Positions 17,751 through 53,300 are shown, counted from the first letter of the stretch. The stretch is 64,000 bases of DNA from Octopus sinensis (GCF_006345805.1 NC_043012.1:15748001-15812000), one strand, 5' to 3'. Made by a program: numbers and translations. The notes: generated from the letters alone by a model not told the origin.

Positions 17751-17879
17751 TATGTATGTGTGTGTGTGCATAGTTTCATTTTTCCCTTTGGTTTTAGTCC
17801 TGTTCTTTGCTTGTTTTTTCTATTAAAACTCTTTATTTCCTTTTCCAGGTGATGGATAACACATTTTACTGATATCATC

Positions 17880-26763: not shown

Positions 26764-27088
26764 AATATATATATATATATATATATATATTAACATAGGG
26801 AATAATAATTATTCCAGGTTATCTGGACATTTACTATTTTACACTTTACCAACAATGCAATATAAACAGTATCATTTATAATATTATTACAAATTTGGGA
26901 TTTTACCAAGAGAACCGCAACTCCTGTTTCAGGACAACCTAATAGTATGGAATACACATAGAAAGTTATAAACGATATAATATAATAATATTTTATTATT
27001 ATATTGGATGTAACTTTCTATATGTATTCCATACACTAAGGTTGTCCTGAAATAGTAGTTACGGTTCTATTGGTAAAATCCCAAATTT

Positions 27089-27824
<736 letters not shown>

Positions 27825-33621: not shown

Positions 33622-34929
33622 CGAGGTGATATCAAAATGTTCCCAGACTAATTCTGTTAACGCGCCAACAGTTAGTGGCACACGACGGTTGCGTGTGCAG
33701 TGAGAGATAGCAGTGATCTCCATTTTGCTGAGTGTCGAGTGACGTCACTGTGCTTACTTAGCAAGTTGTGAAATTTGTGATTTTGTGATCACGTGTACGC
33801 TGTAGTCTGCGAGTTTGTCATGGATTAGAAGTTGGAATAAAGGGCCCACGGGAAATTTTGCATTACACCTGGGAAGTCTGCTACAGAGATATTGAGCATG
33901 CTTCGGTAAGCTTACGGCGGTGAGGCAATGAGTTGCACACAATGTTTCGAGTGGCATGGACACTTCAAAAGCGGAAGGACTTCTCTGGAGGACAATGGGC
34001 GATCTGGAAGATCTGCCACGAGAATCATCCTCGGAAATGTGGAAAAAATCCATCAGCCTGTACACGAGAATTATCAGAAGACAATCAAAGACATTGCTGA
34101 TGTTGTTTGTCGTATGGGTCTATGCAGGCAATCTTAACGTCTGAATTGAACATGCGGAGTGTCTGCAAAATTTGTTCCCCGCCTGATGACCACTGAGCAG
34201 AAAGAACATCACCTCAAAGTCTGTCAAGATCTCCGTCAGTGTTCTGCCGATGACCCATCTTTCATGTCGAGGATCGTCAACGGTGTCGAGAGTTACGACT
34301 ACGGGTACGACACTGAGACGAAACAACAGTTGTGACAATGGAAGAGCCCTCTCTCTCCGCAACCGCAGAAAACACGACAGAACCGCAACTCATCGTTTTT
34401 TTTTTTTTTGACATCCGTGGTATTGTGAATCGAGAATTCGACCCTCAGAACCAGACCGTTGATCGAAAGTTCTACTGAGACGTTTTGAAGCGTTTGTGGG
34501 TGGACATTCGGCGAAAGCAACCAGATCTGTGTAGCGGGAAAAATTGGATTCTCCACGACGGCAATGTACCCTAACACCGAGCTCTCCTCCCTTGTGAGTT
34601 TCTCGCCAAGAACAACATGATTTCGCTTCCGCACTAGCCATATTCGCCAGATTTAGCACCTGCGGACTTCCATATCTTCCCCCAAATGAATATGCAGCTC
34701 AAAGATTACCACTGTAACATCGTTATCAGCATCAATAGCGAATAGCAGAAGGTGCTCGATTCGCTCATGGGAAACTACTTTCAGGCCGGATTCCAAAAGT
34801 AGCAGGAACGCCGGAACCGGTTTATAGCTGCGCATGGTAACTATTTCGAAGGAGATGATGTGAAAACTTAGGTAAATAAATTATTTTTTAATAACCATAA
34901 CTAATCCTGGAACTTTTGATACCACCTGT
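33622..34929 (+). mobile_element. Decayed near-full-length mariner transposon (same family as 24607-25794)
   Basis: TIRs CGAGGTGATATCAAAA / reverse complement of TTTTGATACCACCT. Remnants MSCTQCFEWHGHFKSGRTSLED, AKFVPRLMT, ILHDGNVP, YSPDLAPADF with many stops and frameshifts. Confidence 0.9.
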
Positions 34930-35070
34930 CGCGCGCGCACACGCACTCACGCACACACATTGTTGTAATTGAAGGTGTATGTATATATGTATACGTATTT
35001 AGATATGTCCAGGAGAGTCATTATGCCAATAATAGACCAATAATAAATGCACGCACTGATTCTATCATTT

Positions 35071-35312
35071 GTGGAGGCGCGTGGCTTAGTGGTTAGGGTG
35101 TCAGCATCATGATCGTAAGATTGTGGTTTCGATTCCTGGACCGGGCGACGCGTTGTGTTCTTGAGCAAAACACTTCATTTCACGTTGCTCCAGTCCACTC
35201 AGCTGGCAAAAATGAGTAACGCTGCGATGGACTGGCGTCCGGTCCAGCTGGGGAACACACACGCCATAGAAATCGGGAAACTGGGCCCTTGAGCCTGGCT
35301 AGGCTTTAAAAG
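35071..35312 (+). mobile_element. tRNA-derived SINE, head E plus tail X
   Basis: A box GTGGCTTAGTGG, B-box-like GTTTCGATTCC, body CTTGAGCAAAACACTTCATTTCACG, tail GCTGCGATGGACTGGCGTCCGGTCCAG. Confidence 0.85.
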
Positions 35313-35993
35313 GGCGCATTTATTCTTTTATTCACTATCATTTACTTGTCAATTGGTTAAATATTCAACCAGTTAATTATTCGGTTGCTTGACTTACAGT
35401 TTGGTCAATTATTCAGCCAATTAGATTTGTCAAAGCCTTTCCTAGGCATTCGCGACCTCATCAGTACCACGTCTTTTATATTCCAGGTCTGCTTCAGGGC
35501 TGTCTGCCTGTGTCTTTCCAGGTTCTATATTTATGCTGCTGTATAGGTTGTGAATGAGCTTGTAGGTGAGAGAGGAAATGGGAGAGAGAGAGAAAGAGAG
35601 ATCGGGTGCGTGTACGTGCGTGTGCGCGCGTTTGTGTGCGGATGCATGCTTATGTAGTATAATGGATCCTGTGAACAAGTGAATTAGACAGAACATGCGT
35701 GAAGTGTGTGTGTGTGTGTGGGTGGGGTGGGGGTGCGCGTGTGCGTGCATGCGATCATACAATGTGTATGGTTTGGAAAATTTCTGAAAGGTGTGGATCA
35801 ACTGTGAAAATGGGAAAAGTAGGTTAGTTATTAAAATGTATGGAAGGATAAACCACATCATATATTAGGAAGAAAGCTTGGAATCTAGCGGAAAGAATGG
35901 AGAAACAATTGGGAAGAATAATGTGATAAGAAACCTACGTTGATACTCTACCAGCATACTAAAGTTAAACATGATGGTATGCTAAATAACATA

Positions 35994-36560
35994 CACTACC
36001 ATCAGAAATTAATTAGCACCCTTGATTTGCTCACCATGAAGCATGGTGGGGGTGGTCTGATGGTGTGAGGGGTGTTCAGCTACAGTGGTGTTGGGCGGCT
36101 CTATGCCGTCGAAGGCAACATCAACGCAGCAAAGTACGTTGAGATAGTATGGGATACCTCTTTGGTGGCGAGGAGTACGTGCTGGCCAGTCACCTGACCT
36201 GAACCCTATTGAGAACCTCTAGAGTCGATTGGGTAGGGATTTGAATGTGCAGCAATACAGGAACCGACACGAGCTGTTTGGGGCACTTCTTGCTGCATGA
36301 GGGGCCATCCCTGCACAGTACCTGCAGGCACTCATAGACAGCATGCCGACCCGCGTAGCAGCTGTCATTGCTGCCAAAGGAGGAGCAACAAGATATTGAC
36401 TAAATTTCACGATTAATAACAATTATGTGGTGTGCTGGGATATGTTTTAATAAATTTTTGATTAAAAACGAGTTCGTTTCCGATAATAAGTTAATTAAAT
36501 TAAGAAAATGTAAGAAAATGTAGAAATTTGAGAAGTGCTAATTAATTTCCGACGCAAGTG
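35994..36560 (+). mobile_element. Internally deleted Tc1-family transposon
   Basis: TA-flanked TIRs CACT....TC(A/G)GAAATTAATTAGCAC. Transposase remnants KHGGGGLMV, SPDLNPIENL, LIDSMPTRVAAVIAAKGGATRY*. Confidence 0.9.
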
Positions 36561-37932
36561 TAGGCATAAAGAACTTATCAATACATTCTTTACGACAGCT
36601 ACAGGAGATTAAATTAGTAAATGGCAACCGTCACTTAATTAAAAAAATATACTCTTAACATATAGAGATCGCACCACTGCTGCCACCTCTCACAAAAAAA
36701 GAGAAAGAATAGAAAAGGGGAGAAAACTCCAAGCGATACATGATCATCTATGAATCGACAAGTATACGCCTGCCTGTATGAAAAATACAACCTAAATAGG
36801 ATACTGCGGAGAACATGTCAACTTCCCCTACCCCGCCACCACTTCAAGGAAAAGAAAAGACATGAAATATAGAATTATTGGTTGTCATACATAGATTGAT
36901 GCGTGTGTCAAATTAATAAAGACTAGCACTATGACCAGCAACACCGGGTCATAGTGCTAGTGCATGCATACACAGCTGCGTGCGTGCGCACATACACGCG
37001 AGTACTGTCCAAATCTCCAACCAATCACTTACAGCTGGCTGACATTCAATTGGTGTATCAAGTTTCGGGCATTTTGATTGGGTTTTGGATAGAAAATTCA
37101 CAAAAAGTCACTTCTATTGATTTTTTAATGGCTTTTCAGGGTAACTGGGGACAGTTTAAAATGACCATAGAAAGTGCGAGCCCTCTAACTGAAAACTTGT
37201 GGATTTGTATAAAGGACTCACACACGGAGAGACATTTTGCCGTTTATATATAAAGAAATACACTGGAGTGTCAGATAACGTACATTGATAGATTAGTAAA
37301 CTTACATTTGCTTTTGCTATGCCTGTGCGAAACTATATGCTTTGCGTGCGAAGTGGCGAAGTGAAATTCGTCAGTACTCATAGTCTTTATTTCTTTAAGT
37401 TATTTGCATAACAAATGAAGAGTCGTTTAATAGTTCAATCTGTACCATCACCAAAACAAGTAAAATCCACAGAACTATATACGTACATGCACGCATCGAG
37501 CCCTCTCCCTTACACAGTCCAGTCAAAAAGACATTAGCAGTCATCATAAGAAATATACAGCCGTTTCAAATATCGACAATCTTTCACAACGCCACGCTAC
37601 TCTCATACATGCAAATATACACACATGCACACACGCAAACGTGAACGCACGCACACTCACACACACACACATACGCAGATAAGCACATGATCTCTCTAGC
37701 ACACTTACAGGATCCACTATTCTACAGAAACGCAAATCCCTATACACACACATATATACACACGTTTGCACGAACGCGCATTCATACACACGCTCTTTCT
37801 TTCCATCTCTTCCTCCTTCTCTCATATATATTCTCATGCACATCCTTATAAATATAAATGTAGAAACCAGCAAACTAAGAGACTGTCAGACCTGATGCCG
37901 ACCTGGACTAGAAACGGTATGATATTGATACA

Positions 37933-38163
37933 GGCGGCGAGCTGGCAGAATCGTTAGCACGCCGGGCGAAATGCTTAGCGGTATTTCGGCTGCCGTTACG
38001 TTGTGAGTTCAAATTCCGCCGAGGTCGACTTTGCCTTTCATCCTTTCGGGGTCGATAAATTAAGTACCAGTTAAGCACTGGGGTCGATGTAATCGACTTA
38101 ATACCTATGTCTGTCCATGTTTGTCCTCTCTATGTTTAGCCCCTTGTGGGTAATAAAGAAATA
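37933..38163 (+). mobile_element. SINE B1, full length
   Basis: 19-bp TSD GGTATGATATTGATACAGG at 37916-37934 and 38164-38182. Confidence 0.93.
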
Positions 38164-38579
38164 GGTATGATATTGATACAGGATCGTGAAGGGGGACGAA
38201 AGGATGCTGACAAACACAACTAATTGATCGACCGAACGATAAATCAAAAATCGATTGGTTAATTGGGTAAGTAGTTCACCAATCGACAAATAAATCATAA
38301 AGAAGTGAAACTGATCTAAATCGTGTTTTTTTTTTTTTGGCATAATGATCCTCCCGAGATACAACAGAATTTGTTTGAATACACGAGTTCACACTAAGAA
38401 CCATGCAGGGCAAATAGAAAAACGATATACAGGCCCAGTTTATGATTTAAATCATTAGAAACTCTTCTTGTATACCTCCACCTTCTTCTTCTTGTATACC
38501 TTCTTGTTCTATAAAGAACAAGTCGAAACTATCATGTTCTCTATGTAACAACCACCTGTGTATATAAACAAACTTACAT

Positions 38580-38734
38580 TTACATTATTTACATTTGACG
38601 GATATTTGTCCTGACCTTGTTAACACAAATAGTCGGCTGATATACCCTCCAGCCTTCATCAGGTGTCATGGGAACATTTCGAAACCGGGTTCTCATTCCT
38701 AAGGTATTTTCCGATGTTGTTGTTGTTGTTGGTG

Positions 38735-38802
<68 letters not shown>

Positions 38803-38827
38803 TCACTGCCTGGAATTGAACTCGGAT

Positions 38828-38891
<64 letters not shown>

Positions 38892-39090
38892 TAATAATGA
38901 TAACATCGGAAAATACCTTAGGAATGAGAACCCAGGTTCAAAATTTCCCCAAGACACCTGATGAAGGCTGGGGGGGGGGATATAGGCCGAAACATTGTGT
39001 TAACAACAAACAAGATGAGGACAAATATCCGTCAAATGTAAATAATGTAAATAATGTACATAATTCCTCATCTCTTAAATATAGAACTGT
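38580..39090. mobile_element. Inverted pair of short hammerhead-bearing repeats separated by (TTA)n/(AAT)n
   Basis: 38580-38715 is the diverged reverse complement of 38905-39050, and both contain GACACCTGATGAAGGCTGG. Confidence 0.8.
38953..39001 (+). ncRNA. Degenerate minimal type I hammerhead ribozyme
   Basis: GACAC-CTGATGA-AGGC..GGCC-GAAAC-ATT-GTGTT. Stem I (ACAC/GTGT) and the core are intact, but the stem III palindrome is mutated. The antisense twin (38622-38667) has lost GAAA. Confidence 0.55.
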
Positions 39091-39618
39091 ATAAACTTTA
39101 CATTTGTTTTTTAGAAGCGAATGTGTATCGTACGACATGGACAAGACAGTGATATGTCGAACGCAGTATCGACGTTAAAACAGCAGAAAAGTTGGGTGAT
39201 ATCACCGCTGTCTTGTCCAAGATAATGCCATATAAGGATAGAAGATAAAAATCTCGAAATTTTTATGGCTTAATTTTTCTTCATAGAACTCTTCCTACAA
39301 TTGCGTAAAATATTATTTTCCTCCCGCCAAATGCTTCTCTGGATATGAGGAGGAAGTACTGCTCTACCGGGTGAATAATTCATTTAATTGCAAGGCAAAC
39401 CCAACAAAAACAACAACAACAACAACAATAAATACTACACTTAAACGCGCCATTTTATGGTTTAGGAGTGTGTATACATACATAGTTACACACACATACA
39501 TACATACATACATACATACATACATACAAACATATATATTTATATTTATACATACACACATACATACTCACATACATATAAGCATGTGTCTATCTCAATT
39601 TTCCATCCATTTCTCTGC

Positions 39619-39662
<44 letters not shown>

Positions 39663-39745
39663 TTTCTATCTATCTTCAAATTAATACACACGTAAATATG
39701 TACATGCATCTATGTGTGTGTGGTATTATTATATATATATATATA

Positions 39746-39785
<40 letters not shown>

Positions 39786-40639
39786 GTAAATAATACATAT
39801 AAAATATCCACACGCATACACATAAATGTGTAAATCTAGTTGTCCTCTACCATCGGTAACTATGTTTCCGGTCAATAATTATCGCCATTTCCGTTTTCAG
39901 TGCTTTCTGGCAAAGCGTATCACCACACCGTTAGATGACCACGTACTAACACACAGACCTACAACCACACACCCGCAGCCACACACACATATATATATAT
40001 ATACACATACACACATACACACATACACACACACACACAGACACACACACACACACACATATACACACATACACACATACACACACACATATACACACTC
40101 ACACTCACTCTCTCCTGAATGAAATCGTCACACAGTTAATCTACATCGAATGTTTATCTAAATGCAAGCAGCTTTGTGTATGGACAAACATTGCAAAATG
40201 TGAGTATATATTTATATATGCTTCATACATACACAGATAGATTTACATGCGTAGATTTAATCTATCCATAGCCATATGAATATGTGCTTTAATCGAGTTC
40301 TTAAAACATAGAATTTCCTGTGCACACAGACTTTCGATTTGCTTGAAATTGTAAACAAAATTATCTCAAGCCACGCTGTGTCTTCATTAAAAAAGGAAGA
40401 TCTCATTGTATATTAATAATCTTGTTGAGTTTTCAAATCTAAAAAGTCAGGATGGTTAGTGTTGAAACACGTCTGATTATAGGTCTGACTGATCACAGCT
40501 GTAACAGCTAGAACAACAGCAACAACACCGACAACAACAAAAACAACCAGCACGCAAACACCCCCACCACCACCACCACCTCCTCCTCCTCCTCCTCCTC
40601 CACACAACAACAATAACAACAACAACAACAGCAGTAGCA

Positions 40640-41005
40640 GTGGAGGCGCAATGGCCCAATGGTTAGGGCAGCGGACTCGCGGTCGGAGGATCGCAGTCTC
40701 GATTCCCAGACCGGGCGTTGTGTGTGTTTATTGAGCGAATACACCTAAAGCACCACGAGGCTCCGGCAGCGGGTGGTGGCGACCCCTGTTGTACTCTTTC
40801 GCCCCAACTTTCTCTCACTCTTTCTTCCTGTTTCTTGTCCCCGACTTCCTACGCAACCGCTGAGCCTGGATGTGTATTCATCCATCCGTCGATGCTCTCG
40901 GTGTCGGGGGTTGACCTGCTGTCTCTTCTGCGGGTCTTACGAATAGCAAAGGACCACGTTTCGGACTTCTCCCATCTTGCGTGCTCTGGGACGAAGACCG
41001 TTCGC
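40640..41005 (+). mobile_element. tRNA-derived SINE, head D plus tail Z
   Basis: GTGGAGGCGCAATGGCCCAATGGTTAGGGCAGCGGACTCGCGG head is shared with 48805-49100; the 3' part differs. Confidence 0.8.
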
Positions 41006-41469
41006 TCAACAGCAACAGCAGCAACAGCAACAGCAGCAGCAGCAGCAACAAATACAACATATCTAAGTACATGTGGTCGTCATCGGTTTTATCTCGTATC
41101 CGAGAATTTCCTTTGCGGAATGTTTCCTTTATGGTGATAGCGTTGATGAATATGTAGACTAATTCTTGCATAGAAGAGTCTAATGGCATTGACTGCATGG
41201 TAACGTTGGCGGAAAACGAGGTTGATTTTGTCGAGCCTTCCTCTTCTGTAATATGATTTCTTACTTTTCTCTTCGGGTGGCTTCGAAGATTTTGGTTTCG
41301 ATGGTGATGGAACACCACCACTTAGAACAACTTGACATCATTTTGAGTACATAACCCCAAACAGACAGAAAAACCTAGGCTCTCGCTTCAGTTGAAATGT
41401 TATTATTGCTGACAGAACCTGGTGACCAAATGGATCAGATATTGACCTATTAGATAACAACTCCGTAAA

Positions 41470-41735
41470 ATTAATTATTAGCAAAGACACAGTATTTCTT
41501 TTTGCAACCATGATATACTACCAACGTTTGCCACTACATACATTTTTTTCTCTTCTTTTTTTCTCTCCTTGTTTCTCTCATTGTTTTTTCTGTGTCCTTT
41601 TCTGTAGAAGAGCGTAGGCTCGAAACGTAAAAGACTTTTTCTATTCCTGAGCGTTATACTAATACATCTGTTTGTTTTATACACCACCTGTCTTTGTCTT
41701 TTGTTTTCTTTTTTCGTAAACTCTCCCTATATTAA
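41470..41735 (+). repeat. Repeat with a hammerhead-like motif (probably PLE-derived)
   Basis: GTCCTTTT-CTGTAGAA-GAGC gtag GCTC-GAAACGTA-AAAGAC at 41594-41635. Confidence 0.35.
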
Positions 41736-41958
41736 AGGCTGACATGTCAATATTATGCCTTGCTCTTGTGTTAGCAGTTCTCATTTTCAAGTGAATCTCT
41801 ACAAATCCTCCCTAGATCTCTGAACAAGCATCGAAAACTACGATGTTTGGCAGGGCATTGTATTGTTTACGTTGTTGTGTTCGTGTGCGAAGCGTCCTTG
41901 CTTTCAGTGCTGAATCTGAATTCTGTGGAGGATGTGTATATATAATCTTTAAAATTCC

Positions 41959-42189
41959 TATTTCTTTAATGCCCACAAAGGGCTAAACACAGAGAGGACA
42001 AACAAGGTCGGACAAACGGATTAAATCGAATATATTGACCCTAGTGCGTGACTGGTACTTATTTAATCGACCCCGAAAGGATGAAAGGCAAAGTCAACCT
42101 AGTCGGAATTTGAACTCAGAACGTAGTGGTAGACGAAATACCGCTAAGCATTTCGCCCGACGTGCTAACGTTTCTGCCAGCTCGCCGCC
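41959..42189 (-). mobile_element. SINE B1, full length
   Basis: 8-bp TSD AAAATTCC at 41951-41958 and 42190-42197. Confidence 0.9.
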
Positions 42190-42484
42190 AAAATTCCGTC
42201 GTAAATACACTGTACATAGGGCTGCTTATACACTGTGTCTGGCATGACATTACCCGGTCATAATTTGTGCTGAGTACTACCTGCACATGCTGTTAGCAAT
42301 CGGAAAATTATAAATTTGATGAATTCATCAACAATTTGCAGTGTTTGGTTCAACTTCTCTTGCTATCAAAGTTGAGTTGACTAAGTATTTGCATACGAAA
42401 ATGTAATCTTCAAAATGCTCACAGTACATCAAAACTCAACTTATCTTCTCCACTATGTATATATATATATATATATATATATAC

Positions 42485-42530
<46 letters not shown>

Positions 42531-42588
42531 CTATATATATATAATATATATATATATATAATATATATATATATAATATATATATATA

Positions 42589-43094
42589 TACTAAGTAATT
42601 AAGGGTTTAGCAACGATTTGCCTCACCACACACCGAATTTAGAAATAGCAGTCAAAGAGTTATAGCTATTCTTTCTACTAAAAGGGAGATCTCAGTAAAA
42701 CCACAGCACTTGAAAGGCAAACACAGACAGGCAAGAGAGAAAGAAATGACGGCAATCTATCATACAATTTTAGTATCTCGAAATTTAATATACAATTATT
42801 CATAATTGTAGTGTCCTACGCTGATGAGAAAAGAAGTTGGGTAAGACATAATTATCTAATTCTTATGCTTTCCTAAAACTTAATTTCGAAACGTACGTCC
42901 GTAGGTGACTTAAAATTGTATGATAGATTGCCGTCATTTCTTTCTCTCTTGCTTGTCTGTGTTTGCCTTTCAAGTGCTGTGGTTTTACTGAGATCTCCCT
43001 TTTAGTAGAAAGAATAGCTATAACTCTTTGACTGCTATTTCTAAATTCGGTGTGTGGTGAGGCAAATCGTTGCTAAACCCTTAATTACTTAGTA
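42589..43094. mobile_element. Fold-back element 1: 184-bp inverted arms around a hammerhead-containing spacer
   Basis: 42589-42772 is the reverse complement of 42911-43094 with one mismatch seen, and the element sits between (TA)n tracts. Confidence 0.92.
42815..42905 (+). ncRNA. Type I hammerhead ribozyme, complete motif
   Basis: Stem I CCTACG/CGTAGG; core CTGATGA (42821-42827); stem II GAAA/TTTC extended by AAGTT/AACTT and AAG(A)CATA/TATGCTT; GAAA (42888-42891); palindromic stem III ACGTACGT; GTC cleavage triplet (cut after 42899). Confidence 0.9.
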
Positions 43095-43192
43095 TTACTT
43101 AAACTTTCCGCGAATGAGGCTTTTACATGCCGAAATCTACTTGGTGAAATTAATGATTATTCCAAATTAATTAATTTCACCCTATATTATTA

Positions 43193-43256
<64 letters not shown>

Positions 43257-43261
43257 AGCAA

Positions 43262-43410
43262 TAAATTAGGGTCTCTGAGAGATACCACCATGCTGAAATA
43301 GCAGTCAAAACCCTGACCCTAAAACCACCTTAAATGTTCATAGGTGGTTTTAGGGTCAGGGTTTTGACTGCTATTTCAGCATGGTGGTATCTCTCAGATA
43401 CCTTAATTTA
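43262..43410. repeat. Fold-back element 2: 57-bp perfect stem with an 11-nt loop
   Basis: 43274-43330 is the exact reverse complement of 43342-43398. It shares GAAATAGCAGTCAAA with element 1. Confidence 0.92.
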
Positions 43411-43494
43411 TAGTTTAAATAATTATTACCTTTGTATGGTATTTATTCCCATGCTGGCCACTAGATAAGATCGATTTTTAAATATCGATATTAT

Positions 43495-43562
<68 letters not shown>

Positions 43563-43570
<8 letters not shown>

Positions 43571-44055
43571 AAAAAAGCAACAAGAATGGATTAATATTTC
43601 GGTACAATTGTTTCGTACGAAGACATCTTTATTAAGGCTGCAAATATTGCAGTAAATATAAGTGACCCGTACTCATCAGCCGAAAAAAACATCTGAGTTC
43701 TCCAAACATCTAAGGGTGTGATGTTACACTCCTGAAACATCAGGTATAGTTCTATAAAAATAAGATTTTGGTAACAAATGGACTTCTAAAAGTTCTTTTA
43801 GTGTTGCACAGCACCTGGTCTATGCGGGCAATGAGTACGGGTCACTTATATTTACTGGAATATTTGCAGCCTTAATAAAGATGTCTTCGTACGAAACAAT
43901 TGTACCGAAATATTAATCCATTCTTGTTGCTTTTTTCTTATTAATAATCACCCCGCATTATCTTATGGTTAACACCATATAGATTTCTGGTGCATCTAAG
44001 TTAAGTACCACATTCATGTGAATTCAACAGAACTCACTTGAATCTTAATTGCTTT

Positions 44056-44060
<5 letters not shown>
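43563..44060. mobile_element. Fold-back element 3: ~112-bp inverted arms, with the hammerhead in the left arm
   Basis: 43563-43676 mirrors 43831-43941 with one mismatch seen, and the element sits between (TA)n tracts. Confidence 0.9.
43597..43685 (-). ncRNA. Type I hammerhead ribozyme, complete motif
   Basis: Minus strand: stem I TTTCGG/CCGAAA; CTGATGA; stem II GTACG/CGTAC with inner hairpin CTGCAA-tat-TTGCAG; GAAA; palindromic stem III ACAATTGT; GTA cleavage triplet. Confidence 0.9.
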
Positions 44061-44107
<47 letters not shown>

Positions 44108-44111
44108 TATA

Positions 44112-45358
44112 CAAAGGTAAGTAAAAAAGTAATGCAATTTTTATTAGACGCACATTTTCAATGGAATTATTCAATATTTAGTACAGATGTAAAGGCATAT
44201 ATATGCTTGATCATTAATTATCTAATTTTGTTTTCAGATATATGAATAAATGATATGATATCAAAATGGCTGCACCGCTGAAAGTCCGCCAGAACAAAGA
44301 GCAGTAATTGTGTTTCTTGCTGCCGAAGGAAAATCTCCTGTAGACATCCACAAAAGACTGAAAAATGTTTACAAAGTTAAAGCTTTAGACGACAGCAAGT
44401 TGCAGGGATGGATCCGCTGTCTGAATGAGGATTCAACAGACGAAAAAAGAATTGGGAAATTCAAGCTTTCCAGATATGCCTCACAATGACAGCCCATAAA
44501 CTTCTGCCAACCCTATCAAGGAAAAAAACCCGCTTTAGTTAGAGCTGATAAGCTCATAACTAAAACTGAGCTGGTATAAGAGCTTGAATTGCTGGATCGC
44601 ACGAATATCCAAAAGTATGTGTCCGCTAGGTAATAAAATAACTGAGAAATGAATACAGGCTGAAAAGGTTAACTGTTACACTGTTGTTAGTATGAGACAA
44701 AACCTTCTTTGAAAGGCTCATAACCAGTTGTGAAATTTGGATTCATCATTATGAACCAGAATCAAAAAGAAAATCAATGGAATAGCGTCTTCTGACATAT
44801 CCAAACATGAAAAGATTCAAGGCAGAAAAGTCAGACGGAAAAAGCGTGCAAGAAGAAAAAACAATCAACTTTGAAGCACCGAGATCCTTGGAAAACCTAG
44901 AGCAAGAATCCGCCGAGTTAAACCAAATTTGGAGATAAAGTTCTTCAACACGATAAAAACAGGCACCACTGAAGCCCTAAAACAAGAGAGGTAGTTAACT
45001 CTTTCAGGTAAACCACTCTGTCGTATCTACCCAACTCATCAAGTTTAGCACTCTCAGACTTCTATCTCTTTGGTTCAATAAAAGAGGCTCTGAGAGGCTA
45101 ACATTATGTTGGTGATGTAGAAATGAAAATTGCTATGAGAAATTGATTACGTCAGTATTCAGCTGAGTTTTACGATGCTGGGATACATGCCCTTACTCGT
45201 AGGTGGAACACTACTATTGAAAGAAGTGGTGACTATGTTGAGAAATAAGGATGTGAGCCTATGATGTATAACTATATTTTGATGTACGATATATTTGATT
45301 GTGTTCCTTATTTTTTTTTATCTAATTAAACAAATCGCATTGCTTTTTAACTCATGAT
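44112..45358 (+). mobile_element. Decayed mariner transposon (second family)
   Basis: TIR remnants AAAAAGTAATGC / GCATTGCTTTTTAACTC. Transposase remnants DIHKRLKNVY, WIHHYEPESKRKSME, LALSDFYLFGSIKEALRG, FYDAGIHAL, GDYVEK*. Confidence 0.85.
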
Positions 45359-47455
45359 CATATATACTATCCTAACTATTTACTTCTCTACATACTTGTG
45401 AATGTATTTACTTCTCTACATACATTAACAAATATATAGATATATAGAGAAAGGAAGACCTCGCATCTTTCTGCAGTGAATCCAAGGGTGCTGGGGAAAG
45501 GGATAAAGTAACAAATACTAATCGGTTCCTGAAATATTTTTATTGGATTCATCTTGCGGTGAGGATGTTTGTCTCTATGGTCTCCGGGCCTACCGTGGTC
45601 GGTGAGATTGTTGTTGTTGTTGTTAATCTTTCTCTTGATTTGTTGTAAGTCAGTGACTGAGCGAAAAACTTACAGAGACCGAATTTCAGAGGGTCAGCAA
45701 TCTAGTGGGTATAACCGGTATAATGGTTAGTGCAGACCCTGGCAGAATTGTCTCAATGTAGGTGACGCGGGGAAAAGAACTAAGTCGGGAATACTTGAGT
45801 TGAGATGGTACAAGTCTGGTTATCTCCAAGGAGTAGATTCACTGTAGGAGCAACAGCACTTGAGTCTCAGTTCAACTTTTTCACAAGAGGTAATTGAAGG
45901 ACGTTGATTATTTGTAAGTTAATGAAAGGTGGAAGAGGAGGAGCGTCCATAACACTTGCTGTTCCTTCCTGGTGATGTTTAAATACCTGTAAATATTGAT
46001 TGGAGACGAAAATACCTGATGTTATACATTTCACTCGTTTCTACAACAACTCTTTTATTGCATACGATTCGACAAAATAAACGACTGTAATTGCAAAGTG
46101 AATCGAAACCGGACTGCTAAGTCGATTTATCATCTGCTGCACCTATTCCAACAATAAAATGACAGACAATACTAAATATAAAATTAATAATACTGCTAAA
46201 GGAAGAAAATGATGTTTCCAGTGCATTAAGTTGTTAACTTTCACTTAATATCACATCCGTTTTCCAATATTTGTAGACCATTGCTGCTGCCACGGTCATC
46301 ACCGATCTCACTAACATCAGCAAAATCACTCCCACCATCACCCGCACCACTACCACTACCACCACGATCACCATCACCACCATCATCACCATCAGCATTA
46401 TCATCGATTATTGTCCCAACTGATCCATTAGCCCCCAATAATCAATGGTCCAGCGCGATGGAAAATGTGTTTGATCGCTCTCTAGATCCAAGCGTGGCCT
46501 TAACCAAATAAACCTGTCAACACATTCAAGCGTCGAAACATCAATTCTATGGCTGTATTAGAGAATAAGTTTTGATTTACGACCGGCTTCCGGTGTTGCA
46601 ATGTAAATATTGCTGTCATTTGTCACTATATTATTTCTCCTTTGTTCTGAATAGAGAGAGAGAGAGAGTTGGGTGGATGTTGGCTTGTTTTTCAAATGTT
46701 CCGTGATGGACAGTAAATCGTTTCATCCATAGTTACGATGTTTCTTTTCGTAGCATGAAAAAATGAGAAGTTTGTTAGGCCCTAGCTCAATGCCTCCCAC
46801 TTCCCATTTCTTGGGAGGAAAGTGGCACTGTCCAAAGGTTGCAGACAGCTCTCTTACTGTGTAGTGCACCCGGTTCTGAGAACACAGAGGGAGAGAGAGT
46901 TGATCTCAGCAGATTAAGAATTCATAAACAGGGTCATAAACCCATCATTCTACCAATCGACTGCTCTCTTCGTGATCATGAAGGGGATGATCTCTTCCTC
47001 CCCCTCCCCCTCCCCTCCTCCTCCTGCTGTTGTCGTTCTTGTTGTTGTTCTTCTCCCCCTCCTCCTCCTCCTCCTCCTACCCGCCTCCTTCTTTTCCTTT
47101 CTTCCTTCTCCTTCTCCCATTCCCTCATCTCATCCTCTTCTTCCCCTCTTTCCCCTTCTTCTTCTTCTTCTTCTTACTATCATTACTATCATTATTGCTA
47201 TTACCGCTCAAATACAATGGACAGTGCTACTGTTGTTGCTGCCGCTGCCTCTCAACACGCACACACACCCTAGACTCTTTCCCAGTAGAAGACCATTCAA
47301 TTAAATGGTTAATTATTCTCTCACTCACCAATACAGATACACTATTTTTCCCTTCTCTTCTATTGATACTAGAAGTGATCATGTTTACCTGAACTAGCTA
47401 AGTGTAGACTATCTGTAGCCATGCCCACTCTATCCACGAGTATGGGAAGCCTACA

Positions 47456-48240
47456 ATGGAACGAGTAGGGTTTCTTCTTCTTTCCAAAATCCTGAGATAT
47501 GGGAACCATTAATTCGAGTCGTTTTATTTCACTTTTTTGCTGCACCGAAGCTGGTAATTTGTAATGATAGAATATTAATTACTTGTGTATATATGTCTAT
47601 ACATGTATATGTGTATACATACATATATTTACATATGCGTACATATATACATGTGTGTGTGTGAGAGAGAGAGAGAGAGAAACAGTGCGTACGCACGCAT
47701 GTATTAGAAAAATGTAAGATAGAATGAAAGTAGTTACACTTCAGTTTGGTTCGTAACGCTTCTGGTGTTGGAAGTAAACAAAAATGAATACATATCATAA
47801 TCTCTTCACAAACACATGACTGATTAATTTATCTTTAAAGGACGATCACCGTTCAGTCATTTGCCTACTTCATGACAATTGCCATTTACATCAATGATTT
47901 TCTAGTATTTGTATGGAATAGTTAAACCAATTGACAGCATCAAAATATATATGTACATAGTTGTTGTATTTAGGAATGGTCATTTTGCCAGTTTAGCCAA
48001 TAAAAACACATGCACTATATACTTGGTGGCCTACACTGGAATGAGTAGGGTTTCTTTCCAAAAATCCTGAGATATGGGTACCATTAATTCGAGTCGTTTT
48101 TTTCACTTTTTTTTCTGCACTGAATCTGGTAATTTGTAATTTGTATTGGCTAAACTGGCAAAATGACCATTCCTAAATACAACAACATCTGTTTCAGCAC
48201 ACGATTTCACATCAAGAAACTTGTAAAACAAATATATAAA
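47456..48240. repeat. Rearranged unclassified repeat (a direct ~100 bp duplication plus a 43-bp inverted pair)
   Basis: 47456-47560 recurs at 48037-48140. GTTGTTGTATTTAGGAATGGTCATTTTGCCAGTTTAGCCAATA (~47960-48002) is mirrored at ~48143-48186. Confidence 0.7.
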
Positions 48241-48804
48241 CGTATGTACATAGTGTTCGGGCTAAATTTGACAATATTTTTATGTCTCTTTTTTTTTCTG
48301 AAAAAGCTTGGTGTATTCATGAATAGTCAACGGTTTCGGGAGAGCATAAAAATGAAAGTTGTAAATGAGAAAAAGTTAGCTGACATGGAGAACTGAAAGC
48401 CATCTGGATATTGGAAAAGTGTTACTTGTATCATGAGATTCACGCCGGTTATCAAAATGCCGACATCGTAACTATAGCTCGATGCTCTTGATAAAGGCTA
48501 ACACGACATGAACAGCTACAGTAGGAAGGGACACAGCAGGTGTTATGACTACGTCTAAACGCCGGAATTCATCCCCACATCTTTGAACTGGGGCCTGGGT
48601 TCAATTTACGTAGATGGTTATGTGGTAAGCTGTTGGAGATTGTGGTCAAATCCTGGCTAGTCAGGATTTGGGGTTGTTGTTGGAAGGTCATATGTGTGGC
48701 AGCAGGATTCGCGTCCTTACTCGGAAGTTGTAGTCGGAGAATTTCTACGACTTCACCAGCCACAATCTCTGGTTTCCTAATTCCCAAGGTTGTGATCCCA
48801 TGGA

Positions 48805-49100
48805 TTACTATGTTGTTTGTTCCTTCTCATAAGGGCCTGTTTCCCGGTTTCCTTGGCGTATAGGTTCCCCACCTGGACGGGACGCCGGTCCGTCGCAGGT
48901 GAGCTGCAAGATGCAGGAGGAAAGAGTGAGAGAAAGTTGTGGCGAAAGAGTCAGCAGAAGTTCGCCATTACCTTCTGCCGGAGCCGCGTGGAGCTCAGGT
49001 GTTTCACTCATAAACACACACATCGCCCGGTCTGAGATTCGAACCCGCGATCCCTTGACCGCGAGTCCGCTGCTCTAACCACTAGGCCATGTGCCTCCAC
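48805..49100 (-). mobile_element. tRNA-derived SINE, head D plus tail X
   Basis: Head GTGGAGGCACATGGCCTAGTGGTTAG, B box GGTTCGAATCTC, tail CCTGCGACGGACCGGCGTCCCGTCCAG. Confidence 0.85.
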
Positions 49101-49447
49101 ATTGATTACGATGGGTGGAGCGTGGTTGAGAAAGACACCAGCAACTCTGCCTGCAACACTAAGGCTGAGCTGGTGAGCAAGATAGAGGAAGCATTCGAAG
49201 AAAATGTGAAGCCATGGTGGAAGTTGAGAGAGGCTACTTTGAGAAAACTATTACCCCCCCCCCCACCAGCCACAATCTCGTTGATATTTTTTTTATTAAA
49301 AGAAAGTTATTTTTGGAAGGAATAGTGTTTTCTTCTTTCATTCAGACTCTCAAATTTATCCCGAAACCCTGCATGTATGTATGTATGTATGTATGTATGT
49401 ATGTATGTATGTATGTATGTATGTATGTATGTATGTGTGTGTGTGTG

Positions 49448-49494
<47 letters not shown>

Positions 49495-49704
49495 TGCGTG
49501 CGCGTATGTTATAGCTGAATGCTTAAGAAGTTCGTTTCGCAAACAACAGAACACGAGGTCTTGGGTCTTGAGTGAAACTTCGTAGGTGGAATCCTCGTGG
49601 AAGTCCGTTGGACGGAGAATACTTGTGATTTAAAGGTCCACCAATGCCGCATATTGTCACAATATTTTTGTTCTGTTTTCTTGTTTTAATGTTCTTTATG
49701 TTCT

Positions 49705-49960
49705 GATTTCAAATTTGCTGAGGTCGAGTTAGCATTTCAGCCGTTTGTTGTCGATAAAATAAGTACCAGCTGAACACCGGGGCCGATGTAATCGACTTAC
49801 CACCTCCCATGAACTGGCCTTGTGCCAAAATTTGAAACGACTATTACGCTAATCTGTGATGGCGGCAAGATAGCAGAATTTGAAACGACAATTACGCTAT
49901 CTGATGGTGGCGTGATAGCAGCCTTTTGGTGTCGATAAAATAAGTACAAGGTGAGCACTG
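49705..49960 (+). mobile_element. Diverged SINE B2 fragments
   Basis: GAGGTCGAGTTAGCATTTCAGCCG...GTCGATAAAATAAGTACCAG...GGCCTTGTGCCAAAATTTGAAAC. Confidence 0.7.
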
Positions 49961-50310
49961 GGCCCAATGCCTCAGATTTCAATCTCTGGGCCTAGAATGG
50001 AAACACTTATTACGCTGTCTCTCCAAGTAATCCACACTATCCTAACTATTTCTCCCCAAGCTGTGTCTCATTTTTCAGCATTTTCTCCTTATTTTTATAC
50101 CTTAGCTTTTTTTTTTCAATGCAATGTTATACATTTTGCTTTCGTTTGTAATTTACTAACACTTTATATTTCTGTATTAAGTTACAGCAGATATTTCCCA
50201 CAATGTGATGACGTGTACTTGACGGGGTGAACGTTTCATAACTATGTTTTTGAGAATCCCAAAATAGACTTTGAGATGAAGTAGATACTACTTAAGAATA
50301 GAAATCTTAA

Positions 50311-53300
50311 GAAGGATGAAATTATAAAGGTTTATAAATGACTTTTTATAGAACTTGACTTTGGTTGTTTTGAAGCTCCTTCCTTTTATGTAAAGAAGGA
50401 TGAAATTATAAAGGTTTATAAATAACTTTTTATAGAACTTGACTTTGGTTGTTTTGAAGCTCCTTCCTTTTATGTAAAGAAGGATGAAATTATAAAGGTT
50501 TATAAATAACTTTTTATAGAACTTGACTTTGGTTGTTTTGAAGCTCCTTCCTTTATGTAAAGAAGGATGAAATTATAAGGTTTATAAATAACTTTTTATA
50601 GAACTTGACTTTGGTTTTTTTGAAGCTCCTTCCTTTTATGTAAAGAAGGATGAAATTATAAAGGTTTATAAATAACTTTTATAGAACTTGACTTTGTTGT
50701 TTTGAAGCTCCTTCCTATTATGTAAAGAAGGATGATGAAATTATAAAGTTTATAAATAACTTTTTATAGAACTTGACTTTGTTGTTTTGAAGCTCCTTCC
50801 TATTATGTAAAGAAGGATGAAATTATAAAGGTTTATAAATAACTTTTTATAGAACTTGACTTTGGTTGTTTTGAAGCTCCTTCCTTTTATGTAAAGAAGG
50901 ATGAAATTATAAAGGTTTATAAATAACTTTTTATAGAACATGACTTTGGTTGTTTTGAAGCTCCTTCCTTTTATGTAAAGAAGGATGAAATTATAAAGGT
51001 TATAAATAACTTTTTATAGAACTTGACTTTGGTTGTTTTGAAGCTCCTTCCTATTATGTAAAGAAGATGAAATTATAAAGGTTTATAAATAACTTTTATA
51101 GAACTGACTTTGGTTGTTTTGAAGCTCCTTCCTATTATGTAAAGAAGGATGAAATTATAAAGGTTTATAAATAACTTTTATAGAACATGACTTTGGTTGT
51201 TTTGAAGCTCCTTCCTTTTATGTAAAGAAGGATGAAATTATAAAGGTTTATAAATAACTTTTTATAGAACTTGACTTTGGTTGTTTTGAAGCTCCTTCCT
51301 TTTATGTAAAAGAGATGAAATTATAAAGGTTTATAAAAACTTTTTATAGAACTTGACTTTGGTTGTTTTGAAGCTCCTTCCTTTTATGTAAAGAAGGATG
51401 AAATTATAAAGGTTTATAAATGACTTTTTATAGAACTTGACTTTGGTGTTTTGAAGCTCCTTCCTTTTATGTAAAGAAGGATGAATGAAATTATAAAGGT
51501 TTATAAATAACTTTTTATAGAACTTGACTTTGGTTGTTTTGAAGCTCCTTCCTTTTATGTAAAGAAGGATGAAATTATAAAGGTTTATAAATAACTTTTT
51601 ATAGAACTTGACTTGGTTGTTTTGAAGCTCCTTCCTTTTATGTAAAGAAGGATGAAAGTAATAAAGGTTTATAAATAACTTTTTATAGAACTTGACTTTG
51701 GTTGTTTGAAGCTCCTTCCTATTATGTAAAGAAGGATGAAATTATAAAGGTTTATAAATAACTTTTTATAGAACTTGACTTTGGTTGTTTTGAAGCTCCT
51801 TCCTTTATGTTAAAGAAGGATGAAATTATAAAGGTTTATAAAAACTTTTTATAGAACTTGACTTTTTTTGTTTTGAAGCTCCTTCCTTTTATGTAAAGAA
51901 GGATGAAATTATAAAGGTTTATAAATAACTTTTTATAGAACTTGACTTTGGTTGTTTTGAAGCTCCTTCCTTTTATGTAAAGAACGATGGAATTATAAAG
52001 GTTTATAAATAACTTTTTATAGAACTTGACTTTGGTTGTTTTGAAGCTCCTTCTTTTATGTAAAGAAGGATGAAATTATAAAGGTTTATAAATAACTTTT
52101 TATAGAACTTGACTTTGGTTGTTTTGAAGCTCCTTCCTCTATGTAAAGAAGGATGAAATTATAAAGGTTTATAAATGACTTTTTATAGAACTTGACTTTG
52201 GTTGTTTTGAAGCTCCTTCCTTTTATGTAAAGAAGGATGAAATTATAAAGGTTTATAAGTAACTTTTATAGAACTTGATTTTGTTGTTTTGAAGCTCCTT
52301 CCTTTTATGTAAAGAAGGATGATGAAATATAAAGGTTTATAAATAACTTTTTATAGAACTTGACTTTGGTTGTTTTGAAGCTCCTTCCTATATGTAAAGA
52401 AGGATGAAATTATAAAGGTTTATAAATGACTTTTTATAGAACTTGACTTTGGTTGTTTTGAAGCTCCTTCCTATTATGTAAAGAAGGATGAAATTATAAA
52501 GGTTTATAAATAACTTTTTATAGAACTTGACTTTGGTTGTTTTGAAGCTCCTTCCTATTATGTAAAGAAGGATGAAATTATAAAGGTTTATAAATAACTT
52601 TTTATAGAACTTGACTTTGGTTGTTTTGAAGCTCCTTCCTTTTATGTAAAGAAGGATGAAATTATAAAGGTTTATAAATAACTTTTTATAGAACTTGACT
52701 TTGGTTGTTTTGAAGCTCCTTCCTATTATGTAAAGAAGGATGAAATTATAAAGGTTTAAATAACTTTTTATAGAACTTGACTTTGGTTGTTTTGAAGCTC
52801 CTTCCTATTATGTAAAGAAGGATGAAATTATAAGGTTTATAAATGACTTTTTATAGAACTTGACTTTGGTTGTTTTGAAGCTCCTTCCTTTTATGTAAAG
52901 AAGGATGAAATTATAAAGGTTTATAAATGACTTTTTATAGAACTTGACTTGGTTGTTTTGAAGCTCCTTCCTTTTATGTAAAGAAGGATGAAATTATAAA
53001 GGTTTATAAATGACTTTTTATAGAACTTGACTTTGGTTGTTTTGAAGCTCCTTCCTATTATGTAAAGAGGAGATGAAATTATAAAGGTTTATAATGACTT
53101 TTTATAGAACTTGACTTTGGTTGTTTTGAAGCTCCTTCCTTTATGTAAAGAAGGATGAAATTATAAAGGTTATAAATGACTTTTTATAGAACTTGACTTT
53201 GGTTGTTTTGAAGCTCCTTCCTTTTATGTAAAGAAGGATGAAATTATAAAGGTTTATAAATGACTTTTTATAGAACTTGACTTTGGTTGTTTTGAAGCTC

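What the first reader, a model, noticed from the sequence alone, without database searches (positions are those of the whole stretch)
42589..44060. Cluster of non-coding fold-back elements in (TA)n tracts, two carrying intact hammerhead ribozymes (retrozyme/Penelope-like system)
Seen in sequence: three consecutive hairpin elements (184, 57 and ~112 bp arms), each separated by (TA)n. Elements 1 and 3 have unrelated sequences but the same ribozyme architecture: 6-bp stem I, CTGATGA, long rod-like stem II, GAAA and an 8-bp palindromic stem III. No ORF is present. Established: type I hammerheads occur in Penelope-like element pseudo-LTRs and in non-autonomous retrozymes, and PLE insertions often have an inverted 5' segment. 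Inference: these are non-autonomous, ribozyme-processed retroelements mobilised by a PLE RT/GIY-YIG protein (PLE remnants occur in this window) with a preference for (TA)n. I do not know of a description of such families in cephalopods, but I cannot check the literature.
Basis: partly seen in the sequence, partly recalled or inferred. Interest (0 to 1): 0.9.

Follow-up and report, generated by a model that had tools for sequence, protein, structure and literature searches.

The report
Hammerhead-bearing Penelope-type hairpin insertions in (TA)n
Three small, gene-less hairpin-shaped mobile-element copies sit one after another in a TA microsatellite; two carry a complete self-cleaving hammerhead ribozyme motif, and their layout matches published Penelope-like retrotransposon insertions, so this is a good new example of a known kind, not a new system.

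Summary
Three unrelated fold-back elements lie at 42588-44058. Their arms are 185 nt (1 mismatch), 85 nt (inner 57 perfect) and about 116 nt (1 mismatch). Each is followed by a unique 71-112 nt tail and a (TA)n tract.

A generic type-I hammerhead descriptor finds exactly two hits in the 64 kb, both in these elements: + 42815-42905 and - 43685-43597. Shuffled sequence gives 0.005 hits per window. Both have the full core, G10.1-C11.1, A15.1-U16.1, a non-G cleavage-site base, a 6-bp helix I, a 58-60 nt rod-like helix II and an 8-nt palindromic helix III. Six of 12 compared pairs differ on both sides and none is broken. Rfam gives no hammerhead match even at E<=10.

The layout matches published Penelope-like element (PLE) insertions: a ribozyme near the 3' end, a head-to-head inverted 5'-truncated copy, a tail at one end only, and a (TA)n target. 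No unit is tandem, so they are not retrozymes in the strict sense.

I found no PLE coding remnant in the window; the only reverse transcriptase is LINE-like. No other copy could be retrieved. I therefore cannot separate truncated autonomous PLEs from dedicated non-autonomous families. Verdict: new member of a known kind, moderate interest.

The parts
42454..42590 (.). Leftmost (TA)n tract, impure (90% matches, 7% indels). Presumed original target microsatellite.
   Evidence: TRF; sequence
42588..42772 (-). E1 inverted arm. It is a 5'-truncated head-to-head copy of 42911-43095 and lacks both the ribozyme and the tail.
   Evidence: 185 nt, 1 mismatch
42773..42910 (+). E1 loop, the 5' part of the direct copy. 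It contains the ribozyme.
42815..42905 (+). E1 type-I hammerhead motif. Helix I 42815-42820 / 42900-42905. CUGAUGA 42821-42827. Helix II rod 42828-42887. GAA 42888-42890. Palindromic helix III ACGUACGU 42891-42898. C17 at 42899. Predicted cut between 42899 and 42900.
   Evidence: Descriptor hit. Constrained fold -15.8 against MFE -19.0 kcal/mol; the homodimer MFE is a double hammerhead at -46.2. Helices I and II persist at the tip of the full-length hairpin.
42911..43095 (+). E1 direct arm, the 3' part of the unit downstream of the ribozyme.
43096..43195 (+). E1 one-sided tail, unique sequence absent from the inverted copy.
   Evidence: No other copy in the window; sequence
43196..43253 (.). 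(TA)29 tract, 100% pure.
43244..43426 (+). E2 fold-back with no ribozyme. Arms 43244-43330 / 43342-43426 (inner 57 nt perfect), 11-nt loop. The outer arm ends share two blocks with the E1 arm ends (TTTGACTGCTATTTC and CCTTAATT..TAG).
   Evidence: E1/E2 similarity reached by 3 of 500 shuffles. Rfam sees only a generic hairpin, with miRNA models far below threshold.
43427..43497 (+). E2 one-sided tail.
43498..43568 (.). (TA)36 tract, 97% pure.
43569..43830 (-). E3 longer copy on the - strand. About 145 nt of upstream sequence, then the intact ribozyme, then 28 nt after the end of the motif (34 nt after the cut site) abutting (TA)n.
43597..43685 (-). E3 type-I hammerhead motif, - strand. Helix I 43685-43680 / 43602-43597. 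CUGAUGA 43679-43673. Helix II rod 43672-43615. GAA 43614-43612. Palindromic helix III ACAAUUGU 43611-43604. A17 at 43603. Predicted cut between 43603 and 43602.
   Evidence: Descriptor hit. Constrained fold -17.7 against MFE -19.0; homodimer double hammerhead at -46.8. It is buried in the arm duplex in a read-through transcript.
43831..43946 (+). E3 + strand arm. A 5'-truncated copy that starts inside the CUGAUGA box (GCA-ATGA), so this ribozyme copy is dead.
   Evidence: 111 nt at 99% identity to 43566-43676; sequence
43947..44058 (+). E3 one-sided tail.
44059..44104 (.). (TA)23 tract, 100% pure.

Best explanation
E1, E2 and E3 are three independent, ORF-less insertion products of Penelope-like retroelements (PLEs) stacked in one (TA)n microsatellite. 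Each is a 'solo' pair of head-to-head pseudo-LTR-type segments. One copy is longer (with the ribozyme, in E1 and E3). The other is an inverted 5'-truncated copy of its 3' part. A stretch of the 3' end (the 'tail') is present on one side only.

Inferred mechanism:
1. A PLE reverse transcriptase / GIY-YIG endonuclease nicks the (TA)n tract and primes cDNA synthesis on an RNA that carries the element's 3' region.
2. Copying stops early (5' truncation).
3. A second priming or template switch makes the inverted copy. It starts at a TA-rich patch inside the element that has microhomology to the (TA)n target. This would explain why the tail lies on one side only.

The hammerheads are the type-I ribozymes that PLEs carry near their 3' ends. 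Their helix III is an 8-nt palindrome (2 bp plus a palindromic tetraloop as a monomer). This favours cleavage as a double hammerhead in multimeric transcripts or between two transcripts.

At this locus each ribozyme is single. E3's is masked by its inverted copy, so these copies are probably by-products of transposition and not working units.

Within this explanation I lean about 55:45 to heavily 5'-truncated copies of autonomous PLEs over dedicated non-autonomous families.

What is shown: the anatomy and the motifs. What is inferred: the enzyme, the priming steps and cleavage.
For: - Motif statistics. The strict type-I descriptor gives 2 hits in 128 kb of strand, both here, against 0.005 expected.
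- Conserved positions. Both hits have the complete core, G10.1-C11.1, A15.1-U16.1 and H17.
- Shared architecture. The two share helix lengths although the descriptor allowed wide ranges: helix I 6 bp, helix II 60 and 58 nt, helix III 8 nt.
- Covariation. Helix I differs on both sides at 4 of 6 pairs and the helix II base at 2 of 4. No pair is broken (sequences).
- Folding. The homodimer MFE folds are double hammerheads with an 8-bp intermolecular helix III.
- Published PLE anatomy that matches:
  - ribozyme in the pLTR near the 3' end;
  - frequent 5' truncation;
  - adjacent inverted 5'-truncated copy, head-to-head;
  - tail at only one end;
  - (TA)n bias in Naiad PLEs, also hypothesised for Neptune (PMC8557442; PMC3846280).
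- PLE hammerheads occur mostly as single motifs, and also as pairs 100-700 bp apart on opposite strands (PMC4209133).
- pLTRs alone suffice for mobilisation in trans (PMC3846280).
- PLE families, including putatively active ones, are annotated in Octopus vulgaris (PMC13282606).
- The arm boundaries overlap TA-rich patches by 3-10 nt.
- Near-perfect arms with different sequences argue for three separate recent events.
Against: - No PLE RT or GIY-YIG coding sequence is detectable at the locus or anywhere in the window. The only reverse transcriptase is LINE-like.
- No sequence link to any PLE consensus could be made. No eukaryotic genome or repeat library was on hand, and all look-ups for other copies failed.
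- The tails are 71-112 nt. Published PLE tails are about 30-40 bp.
- Helix II of 58-60 nt is far longer than in described PLE ribozymes (6-8 bp) or canonical ones (4 bp). Rfam hammerhead models give no match even at E<=10.
- Self-cleavage is untested.
Confidence: 0.72

Rival explanations
1. E1-E3 are copies of dedicated non-autonomous families, SINE-like parasites of a PLE. Their RNA is processed by its own hammerhead and copied by a PLE RT/GIY-YIG protein that prefers (TA)n. This overlaps the best explanation and differs only in what the source RNA is.
For: - No coding sequence lies upstream of either ribozyme.
- E1 and E2 differ internally but share two terminal blocks. This is what non-autonomous families sharing a 3' recognition module would look like.
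- Near-perfect arms imply recent activity.
- Non-autonomous PLE derivatives and trans-mobilisation through pLTRs are documented (PMC8557442; PMC3846280; bioRxiv 10.64898/2026.07.22.740005).
Against: - There is no second copy of any of the three in the window or in any searchable collection, so 'family' is unproven.
- PLE insertions are typically heavily 5'-truncated, which gives the same picture.
- The E1/E2 similarity is weak (3 of 500 shuffles reach it).
Confidence: 0.33
2. They are non-LTR retrozymes in the strict sense. These are short units propagated through ribozyme-cut, circularised RNAs and inserted as head-to-tail multimers.
For: - Helix I of 6 bp and helix III of 2 bp plus a palindromic tetraloop match the canonical metazoan type-I ribozymes of retrozymes (PMC4209133; PMC7229834).
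- Low GC content and unit sizes of a few hundred bp fit.
Against: - There are no tandem or direct repeats in any element.
- Each locus has one intact ribozyme.
- The repeats are inverted, not direct.
- Helix II is a 60-nt rod, not 4 bp plus a loop.
- There is no Rfam match.
Confidence: 0.08
3. They are TA-targeting fold-back or MITE-type DNA transposons. The long terminal inverted repeats are intrinsic to the element. The 'tails' are just older flanking DNA, and the hammerhead-like motifs are incidental or captured.
For: - E1 can be read as TA-[CTAAG...CTTAG]-TA.
- Mariner-like remnants are abundant in the window, one directly next to E3 (HTH_48 at 44259-44486).
- Another ribozyme-free fold-back sits beside a microsatellite at 26861-27118.
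Against: - Two unrelated elements each carry a complete hammerhead, expected 0.005 per window by chance.
- All three would have had to land exactly at the right-hand edge of a (TA)n tract.
- The E3 arm boundary falls inside the ribozyme core, with the longer copy running on. That is a truncation pattern, not a terminal repeat.
Confidence: 0.1
4. The hairpins are assembly or read artefacts (fold-back chimeras) in a hard-to-assemble (TA)n region.
For: - The arms are near-perfect.
- PLE-type tandem and inverted structures, and (TA)n tracts, are known to trouble assemblies (PMC8557442).
Against: - There are three different sequences, each with asymmetric loops and a one-sided tail.
- The arms are short (57-185 nt) and carry single mismatches.
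- The E3 copies differ at the ribozyme core.
- Such structures were shown not to be artefacts in rotifer PLEs (PMC3846280).
Confidence: 0.05

Closest known systems
Penelope-like element insertions with inverted pLTRs and a one-sided tail (e.g. Pen2a_Av of Adineta vaga; the Neptune clade also has a hypothesised microsatellite insertion bias)
   Same: - Hammerhead near the 3' end.
- Head-to-head inverted 5'-truncated copy shorter than the direct copy.
- Extension present at one end only.
- (TA)n insertion sites.
- Arm sizes of 85-185 nt, comparable to pLTRs of 180-220 bp.
   Different: - No RT/GIY-YIG ORF between or near the repeats.
- Tails of 71-112 nt against about 31-40 bp.
- No demonstrated sequence similarity to any PLE.
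- Helix II of the ribozyme is about 60 nt.
PLE 'min-HHR' and small-palindromic-helix-III hammerheads (Cervera and de la Pena 2014)
   Same: - Type I topology.
- G10.1-C11.1.
- Palindromic positions around helix III, implying action as a dimer.
- Great sequence variability between families.
- Mostly single genomic motifs, sometimes pairs on opposite strands within 100-700 bp.
   Different: - Described PLE motifs have helix I of 4-5 bp, helix II of 6-8 bp, usually a bulged base after A9, and little or no helix III.
- Here helix I is 6 bp, there is no bulge, helix III is 2 bp plus a tetraloop, and helix II is a 58-60 nt rod.
Metazoan non-LTR retrozymes (Cervera and de la Pena 2020; Li et al. 2026 preprint)
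   Same: - Non-coding, AT-rich, a few hundred bp.
- Type-I hammerhead with a 6-bp helix I and a short palindromic helix III.
- Proposed dependence on PLEs.
   Different: - Retrozymes are head-to-tail tandem repeats that yield circular RNAs.
- These are single units with inverted, not direct, duplication.
- They lack the canonical 4-bp helix II with its loop.
Naiad PLEs with 'HHR_half_core' (Craig et al. 2021)
   Same: - (TA)n target preference.
- Catalytic-core halves separated by an unusually long spacer (35-50 nt).
- Naiad remnants are reported in octopus and squid.
   Different: - Naiads are reported to lack canonical hammerheads and to be long inactive in cephalopods.
- Here helices I and III are well formed and the arms are nearly perfect (young).

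Membership tests
Hammerhead ribozyme, type I | Conserved core C3-U4-G5-A6-N7-G8-A9 and G12-A13-A14 | tested here: met
   CTGATGA and GAA are present at the right positions in both motifs.
Hammerhead ribozyme, type I | Three helices around the core with helix I open-ended; A15.1-U16.1 pair; non-G at position 17; G10.1-C11.1 | tested here: met
   - Helix I is 6/6 bp in both.
- Helix II closes with G-C and folds as a rod (z = -2.2 and -2.6).
- A...U closes helix III.
- Position 17 is C (E1) and A (E3).
Hammerhead ribozyme, type I | Match to the curated covariance model (Rfam Hammerhead_1 and relatives) | tested here: not met
   No hammerhead family was reported at gathering score or at E<=10 on 42400-44200. 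The likely reason is the 58-60 nt helix II, but I did not test that.
Hammerhead ribozyme, type I | Covariation that keeps the helices across related sequences | tested here: inconclusive
   Only two sequences are available. 6 of 12 compared pairs change on both sides and none is broken. No further family members could be retrieved.
Hammerhead ribozyme, type I | Site-specific self-cleavage | not testable with these tools
   Needs in vitro transcription of monomer and dimer constructs.
Penelope-like element (PLE) insertion | Hammerhead motif within the terminal repeat, near the 3' end | tested here: met
   The E1 cut site is 196 nt from the arm terminus and the E3 cut site 34 nt.
Penelope-like element (PLE) insertion | Adjacent inverted 5'-truncated copy, head-to-head | tested here: met
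   All three elements have it. Ribozyme orientation shows that the inner ends are the 5' ends.
Penelope-like element (PLE) insertion | Short extension (tail) at one end only | tested here: inconclusive
   One-sided unique segments exist (100, 71 and 112 nt). They are 2-3 times longer than the published 30-40 bp, and without other copies I cannot show that they belong to the insert.
Penelope-like element (PLE) insertion | Insertion bias for (TA)n, as reported for Naiad PLEs and hypothesised for Neptune | tested here: met
   Every element is bounded by (TA)n.
Penelope-like element (PLE) insertion | RT (telomerase-like) plus GIY-YIG endonuclease ORF, or sequence identity of the repeat to an element that has one | tested here: not met
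   - No ORF longer than 49 aa lies in the elements.
- 219 ORF pieces of the window gave no GIY-YIG match, and RVT_1 only for a LINE-like RT.
- Identity to a PLE consensus could not be tested because no repeat library or host genome was available.
Non-LTR retrozyme | Head-to-tail tandem repeats of about 170-400 bp, each with a type-I hammerhead | tested here: not met
   No direct repeats within any element. No second copy in the window. TRF shows only (TA)n here.
Non-LTR retrozyme | Expression as linear and circular RNA of unit length | not testable with these tools
   No transcriptome data.
MITE / fold-back DNA transposon | Inverted repeats that reach both ends of the element, flanked by a target-site duplication | tested here: inconclusive
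   The left arm abuts (TA)n, while the right arm is followed by a unique tail. TA flanks can be read for E1, but they mean little inside a TA repeat.

The most novel reading that the evidence does not exclude
These are members of active, ORF-less, PLE-dependent families, probably in an octopus. Their hammerhead has an expanded helix II of about 60 nt, a ribozyme subclass that the usual RNAmotif descriptors and Rfam models miss. If so, (TA)n-targeting PLE lineages now scored as lacking canonical hammerheads (Naiad-like) may in fact carry cryptic long-helix-II ribozymes. The one-sided tail plus TA microhomology would then give a concrete twin-priming model for the still unexplained PLE inverted repeats.
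Probability: 0.2. Interest if true: 0.6.

Novelty: new member of a known kind. Interest (0 to 1): 0.35.

Why it matters
The locus is a compact natural record of how PLE-type elements integrate. It shows three separate events in one microsatellite, each with the inverted copy, the truncation point and the one-sided tail still almost unmutated. That makes it a useful test case for the unresolved PLE integration mechanism, in particular self-priming or twin priming at TA microhomology. It also shows that complete hammerheads with a very long helix II escape Rfam, so genome counts of ribozymes and of ribozyme-bearing PLE derivatives may be too low. It does not reveal a new kind of system.

Tried and rejected
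- Rfam scans. The whole window at gathering score and the region at E<=10 gave no hammerhead. The only matches were generic hairpin and AT-repeat hits far below threshold. I do not count this against the motifs, but it is recorded as a failed membership feature.
- Relaxed hammerhead descriptor (one core mismatch, weaker stems). Only background elsewhere in the window and nothing in E2.
- BLAST of the arms, loops and tails against the window. No other copies.
- Pairwise comparison of E1, E2 and E3. E3 is unrelated to the other two. E1 and E2 share only two short terminal blocks.
- Other copies through spurious ORF translations. Two homology searches and nine exact look-ups found nothing.
- Two metagenome pattern scans with family-specific ribozyme patterns. 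Nothing.
- More host DNA through homologues of the window's LINE RT. The contigs come from ENA marine and other metagenomes, are only about 71% identical at the RT, share no other repeats with the window and contain no E1-E3 sequence.
- PLE coding remnants. None found. The 467-aa RT piece is LINE-like: its best solved relatives are R2 and L1 ORF2p, not telomerase.
- A palindrome created by replication at a (TA)n cruciform was considered and rejected, because the (TA)n lies outside the arms and not at the centre of symmetry.

Full report
**What is there**

Region 42454-44104 is a (TA)n microsatellite interrupted by three blocks of unique sequence. Each block is a fold-back.

- E1 has arms 42588-42772 and 42911-43095: 185 nt, one mismatch, 138-nt loop.
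- E2 has arms 43244-43330 and 43342-43426: 85-87 nt at 92%, inner 57 nt perfect, 11-nt loop.
- E3 has arms 43559-43676 and 43831-43946: 111 nt at 99%, about 154-nt loop.

Each fold-back is followed, on its right side only, by a unique tail and then the next (TA)n tract. The tails are 43096-43195, 43427-43497 and 43947-44058. The leftmost (TA)n tract is impure. The three tracts to the right of the elements are 97-100% pure.

The longest ORF is 49 aa, and the ORF pieces have no Pfam match. None of the three has another copy in the window or any internal direct repeat.

**The ribozyme motifs**

I wrote a generic type-I hammerhead descriptor:
- helix I at least 5 of 6 bp;
- CUGAUGA;
- helix II closed by 4 bp, up to 120 nt long;
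- GAAA;
- a self-complementary helix III region of 4-40 nt;
- a non-G base at the cleavage site;
- the return strand of helix I.

It hits exactly twice on both strands of the 64 kb: + 42815-42905 and - 43685-43597. 200 block shuffles give 0.005 hits per window. A relaxed version finds only background elsewhere.

Both motifs have G10.1-C11.1, A15.1-U16.1, and C or A at position 17.

The descriptor left lengths free, yet the two share a 6-bp helix I, a helix II of 60 and 58 nt, and an 8-nt palindrome for helix III (ACGUACGU and ACAAUUGU). As a monomer that palindrome is 2 bp plus a palindromic tetraloop.

Their sequences are otherwise unrelated. Four of six helix I pairs and two of the four basal helix II pairs differ on both sides, and none is broken.

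Folding forced into the hammerhead shape costs only 1.3-3.2 kcal/mol relative to the free MFE. The MFE of two molecules together is the classic double hammerhead with an 8-bp intermolecular helix III.

Rfam reports no hammerhead at gathering score or at E<=10. I attribute this to the very long helix II but could not test it, so it stands as one membership feature not met.

In E3 the + strand arm starts inside the core (GCA-ATGA for CUG-AUGA), so only the - strand copy is intact. In a transcript spanning a whole element, the E1 ribozyme sits free at the tip of a 185-bp duplex. The E3 ribozyme is paired to its inverted copy.

**What it most likely is**

The anatomy matches published descriptions of PLE insertions point by point:
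- hammerheads lie in the terminal repeats near the 3' end;
- insertions are usually 5'-truncated;
- an inverted 5'-truncated copy often lies head-to-head next to the direct one, and is shorter than it;
- an extension ('tail') is present at only one end;
- Naiad PLEs prefer (TA)n, a bias also hypothesised for Neptune (PMC8557442; PMC3846280).

PLE hammerheads were reported as massively widespread in metazoan genomes. They occur mostly as single motifs from truncated elements, sometimes as pairs 100-700 bp apart on opposite strands, and they have palindromic helix III positions that imply action as dimers (PMC4209133).

The rotifer work also showed that pLTRs alone can be mobilised in trans. It proposed self-priming to explain the inverted repeats.

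I therefore read E1-E3 as three ORF-less PLE-type insertion products, 'solo' head-to-head repeat pairs, stacked in one microsatellite.

The outer boundary of each inverted copy overlaps a TA-rich patch by 3-10 nt. That fits a second priming event by the (TA)n target DNA at an internal site, and it would explain why the downstream tail is present on one side only. This step is inference.

**What I could not support**

Pfam scans of 219 ORF pieces covering 1-50300 gave no GIY-YIG match. RVT_1 matched only at 13529-14929(-) and a scrap at 17753-18151(-). The larger RT is LINE-like: its best solved relatives are R2 and L1 ORF2p, not telomerase.

The label 'retrozyme' fails its defining feature, because nothing is tandem.

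Whether these are dedicated non-autonomous families or simply very short truncated copies of autonomous PLEs needs the rest of the genome, which the tools do not hold. All attempts to find other copies failed. Host-like contigs reached through the LINE RT came from unrelated metagenome samples.

E1 and E2 share two short blocks at their arm termini, reached by 3 of 500 shuffles. This is a hint, no more, of a common 3' recognition module.

**Rivals**

- A TA-targeting fold-back or MITE DNA transposon remains possible at about 10%. E1 can be read as TA-flanked, and mariner scraps abound, one next to E3. It does not explain two independent complete hammerheads, the truncation-type boundary in E3, or why all three would sit at the right-hand edge of a TA tract.
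- Assembly artefact is unlikely (about 5%), given three different asymmetric structures with single mismatches. It needs long reads to exclude.

**Organism and literature**

The SINE-like repeats in the window resemble octopus SINEs as I remember them. This is memory, not a test. PLE families, some putatively active, are annotated in Octopus vulgaris (PMC13282606). Naiad PLE remnants are reported in octopus and squid (PMC8557442).

Full-text searches found no paper describing hammerhead-bearing ORF-less elements in cephalopods. These particular families may therefore be undescribed, but I could not check Repbase or Dfam.

**Verdict**

It is a new member of a known kind. Its mildly unusual feature is a helix II of about 60 nt that hides the ribozyme from standard models. 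Interest is moderate (0.35).

Noticed in passing
window 50309-64000: A satellite array of at least 13.7 kb with an 83/84-bp unit and a 167-bp higher-order period, 91-97% matches. It runs off the end of the window.
   Followed up: no
window 13154-14929 (-), with 12137-12592 and 14744-15230: A LINE-type reverse transcriptase (RVT_1 E=2.4e-31; nearest solved relatives R2 and L1 ORF2p) with one in-frame stop. It is bracketed by about 450-bp inverted repeats. Its closest database relatives (up to 85% identity) are all from marine and other metagenome assemblies.
   Followed up: partly
window 26861-27118: Another fold-back (129-nt arms, 82%, no spacer) between a short (TA)n and a (TAA)40 tract at 27090-27209, with no hammerhead. 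It may be the same class of insertion as E2, or a MITE.
   Followed up: no
window 44259-44486 (+); also 24756-25537 and 33757-34698: Mariner-like transposase scraps. The first has a weak HTH_48 Pfam match (E=0.0011, below Pfam's cutoff); the other two gave no Pfam match for the pieces I scanned and are called mariner-like by eye from the translated sequence. The first lies about 150 bp to the right of the last (TA)n tract of the finding.
   Followed up: partly
window 42454-42590 against 43196-43253, 43498-43568 and 44059-44104: The (TA)n tract left of E1 is impure (90% matches, 7% indels). The tract following each element is 97-100% pure. This could mean that each insertion brought or regenerated its own 3' (TA)n and did not simply split an old tract.
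   Followed up: no
window 42899-42911: The inner end of the E1 inverted copy corresponds to a point only 11 nt downstream of the predicted ribozyme cut site, close to where a cleaved RNA would begin. E3 shows no such relation, so this may be chance.
   Followed up: no
window 26693-26754 (-); 29075-29385; 20788-21153: A tRNA-like segment (31 bits, just above Rfam's threshold) that looks like a SINE head, and short tandem duplications of SINE-like sequence (105 bp x3, 183 bp x2).
   Followed up: no
window 34656-50227 (ORF piece not located): One of 69 ORF pieces gave a weak Pfam TMEM9 match (E=1.3e-4). It was not among the ten pieces I re-scanned, so its position is unknown.
   Followed up: partly
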